64,000 nt of DNA from Ophelia neglecta (Eukaryota), in NCBI GenBank assembly GCA_965285935.1, contig OZ260667.1, forward strand, positions 32,426,001-32,490,000, given 5' to 3'. The position numbers were made by a program, and so were the translations under genes. Shown in pieces: positions 18,201 through 28,457 of the stretch (position 1 is its first letter; every line of letters starts with the position of its first letter). The notes below the pieces were generated by a model. The model saw only the letters and a program-made list of their open reading frames with translations, did no database searches and was not told the DNA's origin.

Positions 18201-20040
18201 GTCCCGACAGATGGCACTCAACCACGTCAGTTCATAACCCATTACGTTGTTTTGCTTCCCTTCTGCTTTTAACCATGATAATCAGGTTAAAATTAGACAT
18301 GTTAATAAAGGGGTTTGGCTGTCGTATAAAAATTATATGTTTGCAAGGAGAATTTGATCTATAATGATGCTGAACCATCAATATCCTATAAAATGTTGTC
18401 GCGATGAAATGAAAGATAAATAACCGTTTACCTTGTTTTAACTGCTTCTAGCGCCAGTGGTGGAGATGATTAACAGAGGTAAAGTAAACCTTCTAGTTTT
18501 TATTTATTTGGTCTTGTTGTATGCAAAGGGAATTAATAAAACTATAATGTGTGTGATATTCTAGTAGCTTTTGTTTTTGACATCGTGTGCAATGTCCACC
18601 CTTGAAGTCTGCTTTCATTCCTTTTTCTCCTTCTTCCAGTGCCCATTGTATACACATTCCTATAACTATGTACATTCATGTATCTTGATTACTGTGCTAT
18701 AGCCAACAAGTCTACCCCTGTCTAATCTGTGGTCGGGATCCCGGTCTCTCTATCATCCCCATTTAAACGGTTATAACGTCAAGATTGTTGTTTCTTTGTT
18801 GATTGTGGTTCTTATTGACTCCATGCACTCAGTGTGCTTCTGTCATTTGTACACGCGAAATAATTGGGACATCCTAAAATATTATTATTTATTTAACTGG
18901 AAATGGATTTAGAAATGATTTAGTTTCATAATTTAAACATGCGTGTGATTTTTGTATGATAAGGAGTGAAAGAGACCTGTCTGCTGGCTCACAACCGTGT
19001 GAGGGCGCTTCACCAGGACACTGGACCGCTGATGTACGATGATACTCTGGCTGAGGGCGCTGCCCAGTGGGCCCAACATCTGGCTGAAAACGAGCTGTTT
19101 GAACACTCCAACACAGGCCTCGGAGAAAACCTCTTCTTCGGCTCCATCTCCTTCCGGGACTTTACCTTCAGCCCTGGCCAGGCCGTCTTTCAATGGTAAG
19201 CAAAGCGGACTGTCATCCTGAGGGTGGTCCAATGGTTTAATATACATTGATATTCATTATCAATATCATCTTTAAACTTGTGCTGTGGTTCGTTCAAATA
19301 TATATATCTTTAAGGAAAAGAGCAGTCTACCAGTAGTCTATTTGTTATTGGTTTTATTGAACAACAGGTACAGTGAGTTCAAAGACTACAACTTTGATAC
19401 GGCATCCTCCAATACCGGCGAGTTCATGGATGTAGGGCATTTTACTCAGGTAAAATAAAATTGAAGTTTGTTCAGATCACAACTAGGTATTATCCTATTC
19501 ACTGTATCTATGAAATTGAACACATTACCACATTATTGACAATGTTTGCATGCGGTGATCTTGGTTCATTAATAATTAATTAGAAAGACCATAGAGTATT
19601 AAACACTGTCTGGGCTTTTTTACAAACATTTTTCTCAGACAGAATAATATCGTCAAAGCCTATCACCACTTTTTGTAATTAATACATAGATACCAACGAG
19701 CATTTAAAAAAGGGTTCGTTTATTTGAAGGTGGTTTGGCGTAACACCCTAAGGCTTGGCTGTGGAGTTGCCACGGTTTTCAGGAATGGCCAGCAGAACAC
19801 TTACATCGTAGCCAGGTACTCCCCTCCCGGGAACTTCCTCGGTCTCTTCGCAATCAACATCCTCCCTTTCCGAGATGCAGGTGAGTTGGGCAGCTTTTCT
19901 CACTTTGAAAATCCTTCGAGTTATAACGAACCAGATGTTTAGATATTATGGAAACTTCTGACCGATTTTAATGACACTGAGTTTTCTTCCTCATCTTTTC
20001 AGCCCAACCACCAACTTCATTCCTGGAACTGACTGCTTAA
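12277..20040 (+). CDS. Secreted protein: signal peptide, three CUB domains, Pro/Thr-rich linker, CAP (SCP/PR-1/GAPR-1-like) domain, ~643 aa
   Basis: 16 exons splice into one frame: 12277-12337 (MSLQTFSRIFFLCLFFSSAL), 12634-12708, 13283-13431, 13953-14082, 14664-14759, 15458-15606, 16911-17019, 17121-17252, 17423-17568, 17738-17969, 18103-18225, 18452-18478, 18964-19195, 19368-19449, 19730-19880, 20003-20040. CUB motifs SPG..YPNN..C.W, GRFCG and GF.A.Y occur (with variants) three times. CAP motifs: HN.VR, GENL, WYSE, GHFTQVVW, VARYSPPGN. Confidence 0.9.
14790..15420 (-). mobile_element. 5'-truncated I/R1-group non-LTR retrotransposon fragment (RNase H end plus CCHC knuckle) in an intron
   Basis: ORF 14846-15298 contains WVPSHVG, RLRLGH..TH.YLL and CDRC..ITIQHILLDC, typical of RNase H-bearing LINE ORF2 C-termini. 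Confidence 0.85.
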
Positions 20041-20531
20041 GTCAACAAGTGATGTCAGCGTACGTCAGTCAGTGATGTTGTGAAGCATCTGAGTCAATGT
20101 TCCAACAAAAACAAGTCCGTTAAAAATTCTGAATAACTGCTAACGGTTAAGTTAATTTTCACATTTAGATGGAAATTTGACAGACCATTTCATTCAATTT
20201 TAATTTCTTTTTCGAATATTCGTTTTCAACACCGCATGCGTATTACATGCTACAATAGCCCATTTTAGGTTGCTGACTAACACCAGGACGGGAGTGTTAG
20301 AATGGGGGTTGGAGGGGGTGGGGGAGGGGGTATTCTTACTGTACAATGTCGATATACAAAATTTGTCGGCAAAAAAGGCTGGCCGTTAGATATTAGGGTA
20401 ATGATAAAATTAGCGATAGAGGTAGCCAAACTCTCTGATATACATATCTACTCTGGTACTGAAAAGCCTAGCGGAATGTGACATTAACTGGTTATGCATA
20501 ACTCTATGGCACGCCATACATACTAACTATA

Positions 20532-20662
20532 TTTCTTATTTTGCATGTCCGTCACTTAGAAGTTCATTTGTAAATTGAACAAGACCCAACGCATGTTTGT
20601 GTTGAAATGGTTATATATTGAATATAACATTAGGCAATTTACAAAGGTGGGGGAAAACCCAC
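20532..20662. repeat. Split direct repeat B2 (131 bp), 3' terminus of the YR retroelement
   Basis: No differences found by eye versus 21037-21167. Confidence 0.95.
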
Positions 20663-20736
20663 AACAATACATAATATATATAATATATATAATATATAGG
20701 TACTGATGGATGATGACGGGGGTAGGTGGGAGGGTG

Positions 20737-21039
20737 TTTCCAAACACACCTATCTGGTAAGAGTGAAGCTCGCTGAAAGGCAGATAGTCTGTAGAACAGG
20801 CCAGTCTTGATCCGCATGGCTGCTTTTGGGCTGGCCTATTATCCGGTCAATGGCTTTGCCACCTTCACCCCTTTGGCACAATAGTTTAGTCTGCATAGCT
20901 AATTACCTTAAGGCTGGCTTGTACCAGTAAAATGTAGCATAGAATGGCATGTGTGTACAATAGGTAATATAACTGTTATCGAAACAAAATACTCCCATGA
21001 AAACAAGAAATGCATTTATTGTTACAATAAATTTGTTTT
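20737..21039. repeat. Split direct repeat A2 (303 bp)
   Basis: No differences found by eye versus 28155-28457. Confidence 0.95.
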
Positions 21040-21167
21040 CTTATTTTGCATGTCCGTCACTTAGAAGTTCATTTGTAAATTGAACAAGACCCAACGCATG
21101 TTTGTGTTGAAATGGTTATATATTGAATATAACATTAGGCAATTTACAAAGGTGGGGGAAAACCCAC
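21037..21167. repeat. Split direct repeat B1 (131 bp)
   Basis: Direct repeat of 20532-20662. Overlaps A2 by TTT (21037-21039). Confidence 0.95.
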
Positions 21168-21364
21168 CGCTACTCCCGAAGAGTAGCCCCCCACCCAAGA
21201 AGTGACGGACAGACAATTGCTAACTTTGATATCCTAGATATATATACGCCTATCACCTATAATTAAATTGACTGTTAAATTGTATATAGTGCTGAAGACA
21301 CTCCATTAATGTTTGTATACAGTGCATTTTATGTGCCCTTGCTGTAACTTAACATTATTAATTA

Positions 21365-22985
21365 TGCATTACCATAACTTAAGGCACTTCAGAAATTCCA
21401 ATTATGTAACTCGCTACACCATAGCAGCGTCCCTTCTAACTTGGTGGTTCAAAATGAGTACAATGCGTTTACTAACGCCATTTATCTGAAATAACTATCT
21501 TTAGCCTACCCCTGATAGGCAAAAGAGATACGAGACCTGATGGTCTTCTCTAAATACATTCAGAAATTAATACTGCGCACAATAATATTCGCAGTGAGCT
21601 TGGTCTAATTAAAAGGATGATAAATTACAAATCCTAAATTGCTGTTACCCATACTCGGTGACAGTTTCCATCACAGCTACGTCAGGATTTTGCGCATTGC
21701 TCTGCGCTACATATCCCTAACATGTATATCCACTTATCCTTTATAATCATTTGATAAAACTTAAAACATTATGGATTATGAATTACCATAAATTTGGGCT
21801 TTTAAGAAATTATAAAACTCATCAGACAATAACATAGTCCATTCTAACTATCTGGTTAAACAATGTGTATATTGCGTTTACAAACGCCAATCATGTTAAT
21901 TAAGTATCTTTAGCCTACCCCTGATAGGCAAAAGAGATACGAGACGTGGTAACAATAAGCGTCTTCTCTAAATACATTCAGAAATTCATACTACACACAA
22001 TAATATTCACACAGTGAGCTTGGTCTAATAATAAAGGATGATAAATTACAAATCCTAAATTGCTGTTACCCATACTCGGTGACAGTTTCCATCACAGCTA
22101 CGTCAGGATTTTGCGCATTGCTCTGCGCTTCATATCCCTAACATGTATATCCACTTATCCTTTATAATCATTTGATAAAACTTAAAACATTATGGATTAT
22201 GAATTACCATAAATTTGGGCTTTTAAGAAATTATAAAACTCATCAGACAATAACATAGTCCATTCTAACTATCTGGTTAAACAATGTGTATATTGCGTTT
22301 ACAAACGCCAATCATGTTAATTAAGTATCTTTAGCCTACCCCTGATAGGCAAAAGAGATACGAGACGTGGTAACAATAAGCGTCTTCTCTAAATACATTC
22401 AGAAATTCATACTGCGCACAATAATATTCACACAGTGAGCTTGGTCTAATAATAAAGGATGATAAATTACAAATCCTAAATTGCTGTTACCCATACTCGG
22501 TGGCCATTTCTATCACCGCTACGTCAGGATTTTGCGCAATGCTCTGCGCTACATATCCCTAACGTGTATATCCACCTTTCCTTTATAATTATTTGATAAA
22601 AATTTAAACATTATGGATTATGCATTACCATAACTTAGGGCTTTTAAGAAATTATAAAACTCATCGGACAATAACATAGTCCATTCTAACTGTCTGGTTA
22701 AACAATGTGTATATTGCGTTTACAAACGCCAATTATGTGAATTAAGTACCTTTAGCCTACCCCTGATAGGCAAAAGAGGTACGAGACCTGGTAACTATGG
22801 GCATCTCCTCCGAATACGTTCAGGCATTAATAGTTCACACAATAATATTCGAAGTGAGCTTAGTCTAGTGCAAGATACATTATAGTATCGTAATTTGCTG
22901 TTACCCATATTTGGTGACGATTTCCATCGCAGCTATGTTAGGGTTTTAGCGTTGCTCGGCACTGCGTATCCCTTACATGCGCAGC
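21365..22985. repeat. Tandem array of ~421-bp units (about 4 copies) inside the YR element
   Basis: Landmark tagcctacccctgataggcaaaagag recurs near 21502, 21911, 22332 and 22753. Central copies are nearly identical, outer copies diverged, and a distant relative lies near 23722. Confidence 0.95.
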
Positions 22986-23822
22986 TGTTTATGATCTATT
23001 GAACAAGTTGTCATGGCTTACTGCTTACATCTCCAAAAAAAGACGATACGTGCATGTACAACCACTGAAAATGAAATGCTCCCACCAGCGGGGTTACCAG
23101 TTAATAAGGCACACAATAATACAACAGCGACATGCATTCAGACTTATGGAATATGTTAAGGACAACTTCGTTTGCTGCTGCAGATATTTAGGGACAATAT
23201 GTCTATCATACGATTGGTTAATTGATTGATTGTTTATTATAGTGGCATAGTGCATATATTTATAAGCATAAAAAGTAAACCCTAGACAAACAAATTACAC
23301 CCAGCCCTACTGGGCTTGTTAGTCACCTGCAAATATGGCATTTCGTAAAAGGAAAAAGGCAAAGTGCATGGCACGACCTAGCACAGCCTCCCAAAAACCC
23401 ATCTTTATGTAACGTGTTTACACTGGGCATAGTATACCATGTGCAGGAAAATCTAAGTACAATTTCTAAATTTTCGAGCATACTTTATACTTGTTTGGAA
23501 CGCCTATACTAAAATATTTTCAATATTAGTGTATACAAATTAAACATACTATCATGGTTATAACAGGCCAGATACATGTATATGGGTACAATATTTGGAT
23601 TAACACAACCCAGGCTATAAGAAATGGGTTAACATGCAAGATATAACGATATTAGGTTTATTGGAATAAAAAGTAAATTAAGCAAGTGTAGCTGCTTCAA
23701 TTTTTAACGCTAATGAGCCGTGCCTACCCCTGATAGGCCCGCTTTTAAAGATTTACTAGTCTTGTTGCTACCGATTGGTGATTAACCCCGGTATTAATTT
23801 CAATGCTTACAACAGGTGTATA

Positions 23823-24000
23823 CAGTGGAACCTGTGAATTAAGACCACCAATGGGACTGGAAAAAGCTGGTCTTATTTTGGAGGTTGTCTGTTAAGTCAT
23901 GTTATTAGACATACAAAGTATACAGCATGGTCCTCGTATTAGTGGTCTGAATTGACAAGTGGTCCGATTATAGAGGCGGTCTTTAAGGCATGTTTTACTG
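23823..24000. mobile_element. Tc1/mariner-pogo (Tigger-like) MITE nested in the YR element
   Basis: TA target duplication (23821-22, 24001-02). Imperfect TIRs cagtggaacctgtgaattaagaccacc / cagtaaaacatgccttaaagaccgcc. Confidence 0.8.
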
Positions 24001-24306
24001 TATATCTAAAAACTGAAAGCATCGATGCAATAGAGTCGACTTGCGATTTTTACCAAACCTGCATCATGCGTGCTGACACCTGTTGGGCATCTACAAGTAA
24101 GAGTATGACATAAGATGACATGGTGTATAAACCTAATCTATTTGTTACGTATGACATAGTGAAATGCGTAATATAAATTGGGTGACAATTTATGACAAGT
24201 GTGCAGAATTGAATAATAGGCACCCCAGGCGGCTAGCCCCTATTTGTGTGGAATCTTCGGGGGTATGGGCATGTCTACCCCAGATAGACCTTGACCCAAG
24301 TGTATA

Positions 24307-24780
24307 TTATAACCGTATGTATTTCTGAAATGCATTCGAATGCCACAGTCCCGTAGCTTGGATTTCTAGGTCGGGTTTCCCTTGTTTAACTGCGACCGAA
24401 GCATCTCATATTCGAACACTATGGCCCTTGTATAAATTGGGGCCGAGCCCGCCTGATTTAGGCAGGCACTTATGTTCTGTAAAGCAGTATCTAGACACTG
24501 GCTTGCCGTCTAGGCAGGTAAACAGCGGACCAGGGTAAGTTCCTCTCGCTTTAATACAAGACGTTAGTGCTGTTGTAGGACACATGCCTATCGTGGCCTT
24601 CTCTGATCGGCAATGTAACTGGTCTAGATGCAGTGGTCATTTGGGTAAGAGCGGGGAGGTTGTAGAGCTTATGGCAATATGAAATTGCTGCCCAATGAGA
24701 AGTTATTGTGGCGGGAGCTAAGCCCTGGTCAAATTTAGGACCTATGCATGAGCAGAGGACACTTGTAGGAATAGGAAAGG
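24307..24780 (-). pseudogene. Tyrosine recombinase remnant of the YR retrotransposon
   Basis: N-terminal core-binding motif GLAPATITSHWAAISYCHKL. Catalytic C-terminus PGPLF..DGKPVSR..YKGHSVRI*DAS..GLWHSNAFQKYIRL*. Middle deleted, in-frame stop. Confidence 0.88.
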
Positions 24781-25680
24781 ATGAATGAAACAAGATATTG
24801 TACTTCATATATGCAAGTACGAGGAGTTGCACTAAACACATGAATTGGGGATTCTTGAAGTCTGTTTATTGATAATGTCTACTGTACCCCTATTATCGGT
24901 GTGAAATAACACCCACTGAATGCGCCAGGCATCACCCAAACTTCTACCGCCAAGACGATTGGCACCAGTTCCAACAATGGAGTTGAGAGATCGGCCCAGG
25001 ACTTTGGGAAAGGGACATAAACCCTTTTGTATTCCTAAGTGCAGCTAGCCCTACCGTGGAAGGTGCATACGTGTAGATTCAACAGATCGGAGGATTGCAA
25101 TATTGGATTAAGAATAAAGTAGTACCGTTGTAACTCTTAATAAAGAATACCATGCTTCGCCTCATTATTCAAATGAATATGGTGGTGTGGTTTGTTAGCG
25201 TGGCATGTCACGACGAAGGCACGGCCCAGGGCAACTGCTATAGTGTCAAAATTCCCAGGGACGGGCAATTGATACCAAAGCGGATTAAATTATCCGAATT
25301 TTGTCTAATGGCATGTGGATTTCCATACAGATAGTATCACCATCCGACACCATGAGCTATAGCGACATTTAAAGGTCTTTCATTAATCGGTATGCTTACT
25401 TCTTCACAGAACGTTAGTAACAGGTTTAAATGTTCTAAATAGGTTTCGTCGGATATATACCAATTGACAGGAGCACCAGGCCTAAGGGACTGCATATCAG
25501 CTCAGAGGTTCTAGGACAGGTTCTGCTACTCTGTTTAAGGATACTTCTATATGAATGGATTTTGTCGCTATGTTGGGCTTCTTTAAACTGTTGTGTGATT
25601 CTTTACTATCCTAGCTTTTGGTGGCCCCTGATAACCAATGCGCTAACCCCCTGTAAACCCTTCAAATATAAAGGTAGCCC
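24781..25680 (-). pseudogene. RT/RNase H remnant (DIRS/Ngaro type), RT catalytic core deleted
   Basis: Pol motifs in the expected order with stops and frameshifts. No YxDD found between CSPLGLV and the DT..ME..P.DK block. Confidence 0.85.
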
Positions 25681-25689
25681 TTTATGTGC

Positions 25690-26417
25690 ATAATGTCATA
25701 TTGGTACCATATATCGTTTAGGCAGGAGTGATGGATCTCTCGAATGGTTGGGATATATCTCATAAATCAGGGCCCAGCCTACGGAAAGGTCTCTAAATAG
25801 GTAGCCGTGTAGGTGACAAAGACTAGGGTCCACTCATCGAAGGAATTGATCTTGTCAGGTTTCTAGAATCTTCAATGGGAATCGAAGGTTGATTGTTTCT
25901 TTCTATTAACGTAAAACGTATGTTAATATCCTCATTATGGGCAAGGAGTGAGGCAAGATCTCCGTACTGATTGGCGCTATTCTATGATATAAGGGTATAT
26001 TTTATCCCCCCTCCCAGGGGCATGCTAGAACTTTGGGCTGTTGTTGGCCAATTAAAGGAATCGTGACTAGCCGCCTGGTTACCTTGTAGTGCCAATACTG
26101 CAGTTTTTCTCTAGTCTAGAGTGGTGAGTTCGCTGCTGGCTGGTATGTCGGTGACCTGGTCATAATCCTCAATTGGCCGACTGGGCTCGTATCAGATGCC
26201 GACGGTGTTGCGTCGTTGACATCCAGGTTCGAAACGGAAATCCGCTAATCGTGGTTATTCGCTGGGTCCTCCTTGATGGCGTCCTGAAGACCATGGGTAA
26301 CTGTAGACATGCTTTTGAGGGCTTGGATGTTTAGGAATCTGGTGTTTTTTGCCTTGTGTGATACGGCCGTTTCTCCGGATGGTCCCCATGGGTTGTTTTC
26401 TTGTTAGTCGGAGCCAT
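25690..26417 (-). pseudogene. gag-like ORF remnant
   Basis: Probable start MAPTNKK at 26417, low-complexity N-terminus, then Ngaro/DIRS gag blocks Y.DLA.LL and W..(A/V)F..Y..(I/T)YLE.FP...Y...IR...W..YD. Confidence 0.75.
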
Positions 26418-26719
26418 GCTGAAACATATACTGACCAACCAGAGTATGCGTGTATAATATCCTAAGCTGTTCAACTTTAGACACTTGCTACCCAACCAGT
26501 GTTGTACGTACATTACCGACTAGCAGTTGCCTACATATTACTTAGGAAAAAGGATATAGGGTCCATAACTTGTCACGTTTAATAATAAGGGTGTTAATAT
26601 ATGTACCTGAGACATGTATATTTGTCATAGTTATACCTAAGACGAATATCCCCTGTGACGCAAGCGTGTAATTGTATTCGGCCTATGGGTCAGTTGCCTG
26701 ACGCAGCACATTAGTATGG

Positions 26720-27300
26720 CTAGTAGGCCAGCCATAGGCACGGGCCACATCTAGCCGAGTCCAGCTCACAAAAAGCATAACCGGATGTGACCCAATAGGT
26801 GCACTTATATGGGTATTTGGCCAGCCATAAGCACGGGACACATCTAACGAAATCCAGCTTATAAAAAGCATGGCCGGATGTGTCCCGCTAAGTGCAAATA
26901 TATGGTTATTTGGCCCGCCGTAAGCACGGGCCACATCCATTCAAGTCCCGTTTATAACGGGCATGGCCGGATGTGACCCAATAAGTGCAATTATATAACG
27001 CGTTCAGGCGCAAGCACTAGGCGAGCACAAATGTAGAGAATGGTTATAATACGACAGGCCGATAAACCATAGTTAAATAATTTTGGCCAGCAAGTAGCAC
27101 GGACCCCGTCCAGCCAAGTCAAGCTTATAGAAAGCATGGCTGGGCGTGACCCAATAGGTGCGATTATATAACACATTCCGGCGCAAGCACGAGGCGAGCA
27201 CAAATATAGAGAATGGTTATAATATGCTAGGCCAATAAAGCCACAAATAACAGTAATAAGGCGAAATAGGCCATATCTAGCTAAGTCCAGCATTGTGGAA
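26720..27300. repeat. Diverged 93-bp tandem repeats (plus two longer composite units) in the 5' leader of the YR element
   Basis: ggcc.gcc.ta.gcacggg.cacatc recurs at 26726, 26819 and 26912. gcgcaagcac.aggcgagcacaaat.tagagaatggttataat recurs at ~27008 and ~27181. Confidence 0.85.
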
Positions 27301-28154
27301 AAACATAGCCGATAATAACCATTCCGCGTGGTTACTATCCAGGTGGCAAATATAATATACGTGCTGTATATAGTATATATGGCAGGCCCGAAGTTTTCAC
27401 GCACGCTTACACCGGGGAACACTCGTCTACTGATAATAGGTACAAGCTTGTGACTTACAATAGGTTATAATTGTATAATCAAAGTGAGCCCACTCTACTA
27501 TGGATGCTCAATAATAGTAATATTGTCCACTACGAGTCGTTGAGAAATTTAAATGCTTTCGGCACCGCCCCTCTGATATCTCAGTAGAGGTACCACTCTC
27601 CCAGGGTATTCAGGTGAAGTGGTCGGCGAGCAATATGTGAATTGGCTCGTATAGAATCTTATCATTTTTGCTATGGTACAAACTAATACAATATTGAAAT
27701 TCCCAAGGGATGCTAATTCATCACCCTTGTGTATAGTAAAACATAGCAAGTATGAGCAAGGCCACTGAAATAGCTAGGGGTATTAACACAATACAGCCCT
27801 CTTTAGAAGACAGTTCAAATGCGTACAAATTTTACCCCATAGCCTTCTATAAGGAAACCAGCAGATGGTATAGCGTTGATCCCCAATTTTGGGCGCACAC
27901 CAGGCAGCTAGTTTATGTAGCCTCAGGCCAGCGCAACCAAATATGAGAGAACTGTACAAGTGCCTCTAGCACTAAAGTATTCTGAAACTTCCAATGGAAT
28001 GTATCAGTATATTTGGGATTTGCCCAGTAGGCAATGAATGAATGTCCAAATATTTCTACAGTGAACATAATGGCTATGAAGAAGTACCAAAACTAGCAGA
28101 GACACTAACCCAATTGCTCGCCGACCACATGTATCACTGCTATAGGTAGGGGAA

Positions 28155-28457
28155 TTTCCAAACACACCTATCTGGTAAGAGTGAAGCTCGCTGAAAGGCA
28201 GATAGTCTGTAGAACAGGCCAGTCTTGATCCGCATGGCTGCTTTTGGGCTGGCCTATTATCCGGTCAATGGCTTTGCCACCTTCACCCCTTTGGCACAAT
28301 AGTTTAGTCTGCATAGCTAATTACCTTAAGGCTGGCTTGTACCAGTAAAATGTAGCATAGAATGGCATGTGTGTACAATAGGTAATATAACTGTTATCGA
28401 AACAAAATACTCCCATGAAAACAAGAAATGCATTTATTGTTACAATAAATTTGTTTT
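28155..28457. repeat. Split direct repeat A1 (303 bp), 5' terminus of the YR retroelement
   Basis: Direct repeat of 20737-21039. Confidence 0.95.

What the first reader, a model, noticed from the sequence alone, without database searches (positions are those of the whole stretch)
20532..28457. Recently inserted but long-dead YR retrotransposon: identical split direct repeats around ruined genes
Seen: A1=A2 (303 bp) and B1=B2 (131 bp) with no mismatch I could find. In contrast gag, RT/RH and YR have many stops, frameshifts and large deletions (gag runs into the RT N-terminus, the RT core is missing, RNase H runs into YR), and there is an old nested MITE. Established: A1...B1-A2-B2 is the PAT/Ngaro layout, and replication re-copies the repeats. 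Inference: this is a large (7.9 kb) non-autonomous Ngaro lineage that keeps being mobilised in trans, carrying decayed and amplified cargo, comparable to LARD-type LTR derivatives. An active helper with compatible termini should exist in the genome.
Basis: partly seen in the sequence, partly recalled or inferred. Interest (0 to 1): 0.8.

Follow-up and report, generated by a model that had tools for sequence, protein, structure and literature searches.

The report
Non-autonomous Ngaro-type retrotransposon, recently copied
This 7.9-kb mobile element has wrecked genes but perfect ends: it is one of at least 30 near-identical copies that must have been copied recently by borrowed enzymes, and an intact relative with matching ends sits elsewhere in the same genome.

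Summary
On the minus strand the layout is A1 (28155-28457), interior, B1 (21037-21167), A2 (20737-21039), a 74-nt spacer, B2 (20532-20662). A1=A2 (303 nt) and B1=B2 (131 nt) have no mismatch.

- The genome holds at least 31-35 copies at 94-99.8% identity, with unique flanks.
- All 13 full-length copies I aligned share the same large deletions, and nearly all of the same stops and frameshifts.
- Each copy carries its own variants in both members of a repeat pair: 7 differences in 5,566 nt within copies, against 2-3% between interiors.
- A paralogous empty site shows precise integration at AAA. The targets fit AAA-N5-TTT, like the element's own B|A junction.

The predicted helper exists at G000:C2:18230359-18238094. 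It is a 7.7-kb Ngaro-type element with four open frames: SGNH hydrolase, gag-position ORF, RT/RNase H, tyrosine recombinase. It has the same repeat layout and is collinear with the dead element. An 83-nt stretch across the B|A junction is identical between the two.

Non-autonomous tyrosine-recombinase retroelements are already known (TOC1, SIRE), so this is a new member of a known kind. Earlier notes of this scan describe intact and defective Ngaro elements elsewhere in this genome. Trans-mobilisation itself is inferred, not shown.

The parts
28155..28457 (-). A1, the 5' split direct repeat (303 nt). Its first 3 nt (AAA) are the crossover trinucleotide.
   Evidence: Identical to A2. 92% identical to A of the intact relative.
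27536..28086 (-). Remnant of ORF1 (SGNH/GDSL-type hydrolase): 3 stops, 8 frameshifts, an 82-nt deletion.
   Evidence: tblastn with the intact relative's ORF1. Lesion map. ORF1 identity from Atlas features, score 0.96.
26715..27244 (-). Array of ~93-nt units, each folding into a ~14-bp hairpin, between the hydrolase and gag remnants.
   Evidence: Consensus hairpin with 3 compensatory pairs over 8 units from this element and the intact relative.
25686..26434 (-). Remnant of ORF2 (gag position): 59% retained, 4 stops, 7 frameshifts. Its C-terminal part was lost with the RT N-terminus (474-nt deletion at 25678/25685).
24782..25678 (-). Remnant of ORF3 (reverse transcriptase/RNase H): 44% retained. 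The RT core with the ILDD motif is deleted (412 nt, at 25453/25475). 18 frameshifts, 2 stops.
24310..24811 (-). Remnant of ORF4 (tyrosine recombinase): residues about 66-125 and 245-336 only. The N-terminus is lost (249-nt deletion at 24782/24783). Residues 125-228, including the first catalytic Arg, are lost (308 nt, at 24630/24633).
23819..24004 (.). MITE-like 186-nt segment with 16-nt imperfect inverted ends. It is old, because the intact relative has it too.
23212..23698 (-). 487-nt segment absent from the intact relative and shared by all copies. No inverted ends. Origin unknown.
21338..22980 (-). Tandem array (period 421 nt, about 4 units) made from one ~390-nt unit of the relative's 3' untranslated region. 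One copy (L014) has one unit fewer.
21037..21167 (-). B1 (131 nt).
   Evidence: Identical to B2.
21000..21082 (-). 83-nt stretch across the B1|A2 junction that is 100% identical between this element and the intact relative. It contains an imperfect hairpin/palindrome and the motif AAA-ACAAA-TTT.
   Evidence: DNA fold z = -2.4.
20737..21039 (-). A2 (303 nt).
20663..20736 (-). 74-nt spacer between A2 and B2, with a 9-nt simple repeat whose copy number varies among copies. The intact relative has a 49-nt spacer.
20532..20662 (-). B2, the 3' end of the element. Its last 3 nt are AAA.

Best explanation
This is one young insertion of a non-autonomous family of Ngaro-type (DIRS-order, tyrosine-recombinase) retrotransposons.

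The family descends from a four-gene element: SGNH hydrolase, gag-position ORF, RT/RNase H, tyrosine recombinase. It lost all coding capacity long ago. It kept the parts needed in cis: the split direct repeats A and B, the B|A junction, the hairpin array upstream of gag, and 3' untranslated sequence, one module of which it quadruplicated.

Proposed mechanism (inferred):
1. Its RNA is reverse-transcribed by proteins supplied in trans by an intact relative.
2. The internal B1-A2 copy restores the cDNA ends, which makes A1=A2 and B1=B2 at each cycle.
3. The helper's recombinase joins the B2|A1 junction (G-AAA-ACAAATTT) to a genomic AAA-N5-TTT site by conservative recombination in the AAA trinucleotide.

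What is shown: the anatomy, the copy number, the shared lesions, the renewal of the repeats, the precise AAA integration, and the existence of an intact collinear relative.

What is inferred: reverse transcription in trans, the circular or joined intermediate, and the identity of the helper. These follow the Poulter-Goodwin model as summarised in PMC7192593 and PMC6681497.
For: Copy number and exact ends. 16 near-full-length copies, 31 loci with the same recombinase remnant, 35 exact junctions. All have unrelated flanks starting exactly at the A1 and B2 ends.

Shared lesions. All five large deletions and nearly all stops and frameshifts are shared by 13/13 copies. Subfamilies carry their own shared indels, as expected of replicating lineages.

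Repeat renewal. Within copies A1/A2 and B1/B2 differ at 7 of 5,566 nt (0.13%), while interiors differ by 0.2-3.6%. Variants such as the four A changes of L010 or the 1-nt B insertion of L011 occur in both members of the pair.

Dead genes. Polymorphism among copies is even over codon positions (p = 0.50). Differences from the intact relative are not (13/17/23%, p = 8e-6).

Constraint on the cis parts. Diversity among copies is 0.1-0.35% in B and 0.8-1.0% in A, against 2.0-3.05% in the interior. 83 nt across the junction are identical to the relative, although the rest is 71-88% identical.

Integration. A paralogous empty site reads ...cagag[AAA]agctg..., and the occupied site has AAA at both ends with nothing else changed. 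T occupies +6, +7 and +8 in 12, 13 and 12 of 14 targets (P about 5e-5 per position).

Helper. G000:C2:18230359-18238094 (minus strand) has open frames of 214, 437, 664 and 336 codons. It has an RVT_1 match (1e-13), the ILDD motif, and the recombinase motifs LRVGE / HSFR / GRW...Y. It has the same A1...B1A2-spacer-B2 layout.

Literature. A DIRS-1 RT can act in trans on a truncated element, and a junction trinucleotide is expected at both ends (PMC7192593).
Against: No direct evidence of RNA, cDNA or trans-complementation. No RNA run holds the locus.

The candidate helper is not a perfect match. Its A is 92% and its B 95% identical to those of the dead family, and its recombinase is only 66-68% identical to the remnant.

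The helper's own repeats differ at 5 of 429 nt, so that copy is older than most of the dead copies it would have served.

I saw only one intact copy, plus a second copy of the same lineage for which I hold 3 kb from its 5' end.

The 74-nt spacer between A2 and B2 is not part of the textbook A1...B1A2B2 scheme.

The genome search scores only the best candidates, so copy counts are lower bounds, and a closer helper could have been missed or be absent from this individual.
Confidence: 0.85

Rival explanations
1. The family is mobilised in trans, but by a different helper than the C2 element: another Ngaro family of this genome, or an intact copy that is unassembled or absent from this individual.
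For: The genome holds very many intact Ngaro-type RT and recombinase frames from several families. The C2 copy's repeats are about 1% diverged, so it is older than many dead copies. Its termini are 92-95% identical to the dead family's, not 100%.
Against: With a probe from the dead recombinase, 150 of 161 candidates were scored. The C2 element is the only intact frame above 51% identity (66%). It alone is collinear with the dead family along the whole length, and it shares an 83-nt identical junction.
Confidence: 0.2
2. The copies spread as DNA, by segmental duplication or by recombinase-only excision and reintegration of a DNA circle, without reverse transcription.
For: The element ends in a recombinase-type site, and integration is conservative. 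DNA transposons that use a tyrosine recombinase (Cryptons) exist in this genome, according to earlier scan notes.
Against: Flanks are unrelated right up to the ends, so these are not segmental duplications. Cut-and-paste would neither raise the copy number to 30 or more nor renew both members of each repeat pair with copy-specific variants. The split-repeat layout is the one tied to reverse transcription in Ngaro, PAT and VIPER elements (PMC6681497).
Confidence: 0.04
3. This is a single old copy whose repeats were homogenised by gene conversion, or an assembly artefact.
For: None beyond the identity of the repeats in this one copy.
Against: Many dispersed copies have the same anatomy. Short-read unitigs of the source sample lie on the element's parts at very high word depth, and no joint contradicts the assembly. 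However, no listed contig bridges the 20531/20532 boundary, so this adds little.
Confidence: 0.01

Closest known systems
Ngaro-like retrotransposons (DIRS order; Goodwin and Poulter 2004, as described in PMC6681497, PMC7192593, PMC8547959)
   Same: Split direct repeats A1...B1A2B2. Gene order gag, RT/RNase H, tyrosine recombinase, with no methyltransferase. An extra hydrolase gene, as in some Ngaro elements. No target-site duplication beyond the junction trinucleotide.
   Different: This copy has no working gene. A 74-nt spacer lies between A2 and B2. In this lineage the hydrolase gene lies first, upstream of gag, as in other Ngaro elements of this genome (earlier scan note s1-733643). Placement in an RT tree was not done.
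TOC1 of Chlamydomonas, an active non-autonomous DIRS-order element (with TOC3 as a coding relative), as cited in bioRxiv 10.1101/2022.06.16.496473
   Same: A non-coding retroelement of the tyrosine-recombinase order with peculiar terminal repeats that still transposes, presumably using a relative's proteins.
   Different: TOC1 belongs to a different superfamily and a different host kingdom. The element here still shows the whole decayed gene set collinear with its relative.
SIRE, the short non-autonomous derivative of VIPER in Trypanosoma cruzi (PMC6681497)
   Same: A non-autonomous derivative built around the split-repeat ends of a tyrosine-recombinase retroelement.
   Different: SIRE is about 0.4 kb and consists of little more than A2-B2. 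This family is 7.9 kb and keeps decayed genes plus amplified untranslated sequence.
LARD/TRIM derivatives of LTR retrotransposons
   Same: Large non-coding interior between intact terminal repeats. Amplified in trans. Repeats renewed at each cycle, so repeat identity dates the insertion.
   Different: Those have LTRs, integrase-made duplications and tRNA priming. Here there are split repeats and recombinase integration at AAA.

Membership tests
Ngaro-like (DIRS order) | Split direct repeats in the order A1 ... B1 A2 B2 | tested here: met
   the order is found in this copy, in all full-length copies and in the intact relative. One deviation: a 74-nt (49-nt in the relative) spacer between A2 and B2.
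Ngaro-like (DIRS order) | Tyrosine recombinase instead of a DDE integrase | tested here: met
   The remnant at 24310-24811 matches intact recombinases of the genome. Those carry Pfam PF00589. The intact relative's ORF4 keeps R, H-x-x-R and Y, though Pfam itself did not score it.
Ngaro-like (DIRS order) | RT/RNase H upstream of the recombinase, and no methyltransferase domain (which separates Ngaro from DIRS1-like and PAT-like) | tested here: met
   The intact relative's ORF3 is 664 codons with RVT_1 only, and it overlaps ORF4 directly. The related L037 has RVT_1 plus an RNase H-like match. Absence of the methyltransferase is judged from length and Pfam, not from a dedicated profile.
Ngaro-like (DIRS order) | Integration without target duplication, with the junction trinucleotide at both ends | tested here: met
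   The paralogous empty site has AAA and the occupied site has AAA at both ends. No duplication in 14 flank pairs.
Ngaro-like (DIRS order) | RT/RNase H groups with Ngaro in a phylogeny | not tested
   No tree with reference DIRS1, PAT, Ngaro and VIPER sequences was built, because no reference set was on hand.
Non-autonomous retroelement mobilised in trans (TOC1 / SIRE / LARD type) | No intact gene for RT or recombinase in any family member examined | tested here: met
   Large deletions, stops and frameshifts are shared by 13/13 copies. The recombinase probe finds open frames of at most 168 codons in the family.
Non-autonomous retroelement mobilised in trans (TOC1 / SIRE / LARD type) | Many dispersed copies made after the genes died | tested here: met
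   for the copies. Unique flanks. Neutral codon-position pattern among copies.
Non-autonomous retroelement mobilised in trans (TOC1 / SIRE / LARD type) | Termini matched to those of a coding partner in the same genome | tested here: met
   Same layout. A is 92% and B 95% identical. 83 nt across the junction are identical.
Non-autonomous retroelement mobilised in trans (TOC1 / SIRE / LARD type) | Demonstrated copying by the partner's proteins | not testable with these tools
   This needs an experiment or population and expression data. No RNA run was found.

The most novel reading that the evidence does not exclude
The dead family is a specialised parasite of a nearly single-copy Ngaro element and outnumbers it by at least 30 to 1. 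What it has kept or multiplied would then mark the minimal cis-acting set for split-repeat retrotransposition. That set is the 83-nt invariant B|A junction with an att-like AAA-N5-TTT core, the hairpin array upstream of gag, and a 3' untranslated module present four times. On this reading the quadruplicated module is a selected decoy or extra binding site for helper proteins, not junk.
Probability: 0.3. Interest if true: 0.6.

Novelty: new member of a known kind. Interest (0 to 1): 0.42.

Why it matters
How tyrosine-recombinase retrotransposons with split direct repeats complete their cDNA and choose targets is still known mostly from models.

This genome offers a natural helper/parasite pair that points to which sequences matter:
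- an 83-nt junction held identical while the rest drifted 12-29%;
- B and A repeats under clear constraint;
- a retained hairpin array;
- a target motif (AAA-N5-TTT) that mirrors the element's own junction;
- an empty site showing conservative integration.

The pair also gives genome annotators a 7.9-kb family that protein-based classifiers will miss, since Pfam saw nothing in it. As a category, a non-autonomous DIRS-order element, it is not new.

Tried and rejected
- Pfam on 20 open pieces of the minus strand gave nothing usable. The remnants became visible only with intact elements of the same genome as queries.
I therefore read the intact relative's locus from six overlapping 3-kb loci found by exact 30-mers taken from tool output. 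These are the assembly's own letters.
- A global MAFFT alignment of the relative with the copies forced non-homologous columns over the deletions (about 41% identity in ORF3 and ORF4). I replaced it with block-wise alignment on the BLAST blocks.
- The 487-nt element-specific insert as a MITE: no inverted ends and no other copies in the DNA I held.
- A long inverted repeat search over the element found none.
- Reads. Only three runs of one sample were available, held as short contigs, with no RNA. One X3 contig (309 nt, carrying the 20480 G>A variant) follows the flank to 20534, which is the boundary plus the three overlap letters, and then leaves the reference. This fits a heterozygous empty site, but the unmatched letters were not shown, so I do not count it.
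- Word depth on the repeats is about 100 times that of the flank. The tool warns this is not a copy number.
- The gag identity of ORF2 rests on position only. Pfam found nothing, and the Atlas found only unnamed clusters.
- All 12 searches of the own genome are spent, so I could not count the MITE-like segment, the 421-nt unit or the shorter size classes genome-wide.
Full report
OBSERVATION

The repeat finder and a base-by-base comparison give two perfect direct repeat pairs:
- 20737-21039 = 28155-28457 (303 nt, no mismatch);
- 20532-20662 = 21037-21167 (131 nt, no mismatch).

On the minus strand this reads A1 (28457 to 28155), interior, B1, A2, a 74-nt spacer, B2 (ending at 20532). B and A overlap by three A's. 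The window contains no N. Two tandem arrays lie inside: period 421 nt at about 21340-22980, and period 93 nt at 26710-27240. The coordinates of the finding are exact.

IS IT A FAMILY?

A search of the window's own 762-Mb assembly with the whole element returned 16 near-full-length matches at 94-99% identity on seven large contigs, plus fragments.
- Every copy I could read has the same order A1 ... B1 A2 spacer B2.
- Flanks are unrelated from the first base outside A1 and B2.
- A 76-codon piece of the recombinase remnant finds 31 loci at 88% identity or more. 26 of them have exactly the same 76-codon open frame, so the same flanking stops.
- The exact 30-nt B|A junction occurs 35 times, and 110 times with up to 3 mismatches, which also picks up A1 starts.

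These are lower bounds, because the tool scores only the best candidates.

REPEATS ARE RENEWED AT EACH COPYING

Thirteen full-length copies differ from one another by 0.2-3.6% and fall into subfamilies with their own shared indels, for example a 51-nt insertion in L003, L004 and L006. Within each copy, A1/A2 and B1/B2 differ at only 7 of 5,566 compared bases (0.13%), and the window's copy has none. Variants that distinguish copies occur in both members of the pair. Examples are four changes in A of L010 and a 1-nt insertion in B of L011.

This is what replication through a template that restores both repeats predicts. It also means that most divergence between copies arose in replicating source lineages, not after insertion.

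THE GENES ARE DEAD, AND THE LESIONS ARE SHARED

Pfam found nothing in 20 open pieces. Intact tyrosine-recombinase loci from the same genome located recombinase and RNase H remnants at 24313-24936.

The closest intact recombinase frame (66% identity, 336 codons) lies at G000:C2:18232342. An exact B|A junction lies 1.5 kb downstream of it, and an A start 7.26 kb upstream of that junction. A 664-codon RT/RNase H frame lies just upstream of the recombinase frame.

I read this locus from overlapping 3-kb loci of the assembly. It is a 7,736-nt element at C2:18230359-18238094, minus strand:
- A1 (300 nt), B1 (129 nt), A2, a 49-nt spacer, B2;
- open frames of 214, 437, 664 and 336 codons;
- ORF1 resembles GDSL/SGNH hydrolases (Atlas features 0.96; Pfam silent);
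- ORF2 has no named relatives and is called gag by position only;
- ORF3 has RVT_1 (1e-13) and the ILDD motif that other intact RTs of this genome also use;
- ORF4 keeps the recombinase Arg, His-x-x-Arg and Tyr motifs.

The dead element is collinear with this relative over its whole length at 71-88% identity. Relative to it, the dead element lacks:
- 82 nt in ORF1;
- 474 nt joining ORF2 to the RT N-terminus;
- 412 nt holding the RT core and ILDD;
- 249 nt joining RNase H to the recombinase;
- 308 nt inside the recombinase, including the first catalytic Arg.

It also has 10 stops and 36 frameshifting indels in the aligned blocks. Seven of the stops are present in 13/13 copies and three in 11/13. 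All large deletions are shared, since the copies align end to end with only small indels.

One ~390-nt unit of the relative's 3' untranslated region is present four times in the dead element. One copy has three units.

Among the dead copies, polymorphic sites are spread evenly over the relative's codon positions (7.4, 8.3 and 9.0%; p = 0.50). Differences between the relative and the dead element are not even (13, 17 and 23%; p = 8e-6). So the family has evolved without coding constraint since before its amplification.

WHAT IS CONSERVED

Diversity among the dead copies:
- B: 0.12-0.35%
- A: 0.8-1.0%
- interior segments: 2.0-3.05%, except the recombinase remnant (1.5%)

A run of 83 nt across the B1|A2 junction (46 nt of B, 37 nt of A) is identical between the dead family and the intact relative, although A as a whole is 92% and B 95% identical. 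This run contains a 9-bp perfect palindrome within a longer imperfect one. As single-stranded DNA it folds moderately better than shuffles (z = -2.4).

The 93-nt units between the hydrolase and gag remnants each form a ~14-bp hairpin, with three pairs kept by double changes across eight units of both elements. This agrees with an earlier scan note on another Ngaro element of this genome. I tested it only this far.

INTEGRATION

Copy L010 sits inside a member of another multi-copy recombinase element family (loci L041-L046). The uninterrupted paralogues read ...cagag AAA agctg.... The occupied site reads ...cagag AAAAC...(element)...AAGAAA agctg.... The B|A junction reads G AAA A C, so the product is what conservative recombination within AAA gives. 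There is no duplication and no loss.

Two of 17 copies, and the relative itself, start with ATA or ACA instead of AAA. That is as expected if the middle base of the target may differ.

Downstream flanks have T at +6, +7 and +8 in 12, 13 and 12 of 14 sites (P about 5e-5 per position at 32% T). The target is therefore AAA-N5-TTT, the same pattern as the element's own AAA-ACAAA-TTT.

A junction trinucleotide at both ends is what the published model for DIRS-order elements expects (PMC7192593).

MECHANISM

Shown: anatomy, family size, shared lesions, repeat renewal, constraint on the ends, precise AAA integration, and an intact collinear relative with the same ends.

Inferred from the published split-repeat model (PMC6681497, PMC7192593):
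1. transcription from A1 to B2;
2. reverse transcription by proteins made from an intact element;
3. use of the internal B1-A2 copy to restore and join the ends;
4. recombinase-mediated integration of the joined form.

Trans action of a DIRS-order RT on a truncated element has been shown experimentally in Dictyostelium (PMC7192593).

Two weak points:
- The C2 element's own repeats differ at 5 of 429 nt, so that copy is older than most dead copies.
- I found only one intact copy, plus a second copy of its lineage at C1:26388374, for which I hold the first 3 kb.

The actual helper may therefore be a sister copy that is unassembled or absent from this individual.

AGE OF THE WINDOW'S COPY

There are no differences in 434 nt of repeat. 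Its closest relatives, L002 and L014, differ by 0.4-0.5%.

Short-read contigs of the one available sample show two haplotypes in the left flank. One contig follows the flank to 20534, which is the boundary plus the three overlap bases, and then departs. This would fit a heterozygous empty site, but I could not see the unmatched part and the tool's single call is spent.

COMPARISON WITH KNOWN ELEMENTS, AND NOVELTY

The layout, gene order, lack of room for a methyltransferase, extra hydrolase and trinucleotide integration place the lineage with Ngaro-like elements. An RT tree was not built.

Non-autonomous members of the order are known: TOC1 in Chlamydomonas (cited in bioRxiv 10.1101/2022.06.16.496473) and SIRE of VIPER (PMC6681497). 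A phrase search of the paper library found no described non-autonomous Ngaro family. That search is by wording only and is not proof of absence.

I class the finding as a new member of a known kind. It has useful detail on cis-acting parts and target choice. Earlier notes of this scan describe, elsewhere in this genome, an intact four-gene Ngaro element, a hairpin array upstream of gag, and a defective hydrolase-first copy.

Noticed in passing
L010 / L044 (G000:C5:80152189-80162188) and L041-L046: One dead copy is inserted into a member of another, very young recombinase element family. That family has a 348-codon open recombinase frame and at least 9 near-identical copies listed. This nesting supplied the empty-site comparison.
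   Followed up: partly
G000:C1:8928414/8934174, C1:126382536/126388294, C9:24173445/24176806: Shorter size classes with the same ends. The distance from A start to B|A junction is 5.76 kb at two different loci and 3.36 kb at one. They look like further-deleted derivatives that also transposed. I could not fetch them.
   Followed up: no
G000:C5:115405233-115414061, C5:114616036-114626757, C2:121169196-121177823: A sister subfamily with a one-base variant of the junction palindrome (GTGACAAT). Its A-to-junction distances are longer (8.6-10.7 kb). Its recombinase remnants are 88-91% identical to the window's, with open frames of up to 168 codons.
   Followed up: no
L048 = G000:C1:26388373-26391402: A second copy of the intact relative's lineage. 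It is 96% identical over the first 2.1 kb, with the 214-codon hydrolase frame open. After that it bears no similarity to the relative, so it is interrupted or truncated.
   Followed up: partly
window 26715-27244 and L049:1162-1606: Each ~93-nt repeat unit between the hydrolase and gag regions folds into a ~14-bp hairpin, with a few compensatory changes. Both the dead family and the intact relative keep the array. It may be an RNA signal.
   Followed up: partly
whole genome: The genome is unusually rich in tyrosine-recombinase elements. At least 95 Phage_integrase-type matches were scored, most in open frames of 330-450 codons. More than 100 RT/RNase H matches were scored, mostly in open frames of 500-670 codons, from several families, some with 100% identical copies.
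   Followed up: no
window 19000-20534: Contigs of the source sample show a second haplotype in the left flank, with about 10 single-base differences. A 309-nt contig of that haplotype leaves the reference at 20534. It may be an empty-site allele.
   Followed up: partly
G000:C2:58672120 and 58675613: Two exact B|A junctions lie 3.5 kb apart on the same strand, next to one recombinase remnant. This could be a tandem, nested or rearranged arrangement of two elements.
   Followed up: no
window 23819-24004 and L002:565-672: A MITE-like 186-nt segment with inverted ends beginning TATACAGTGGAACC. One 72%-identical copy lies outside any element. Repeats of this kind may account for the 4,104 first-look candidates, but I did not test this.
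   Followed up: partly
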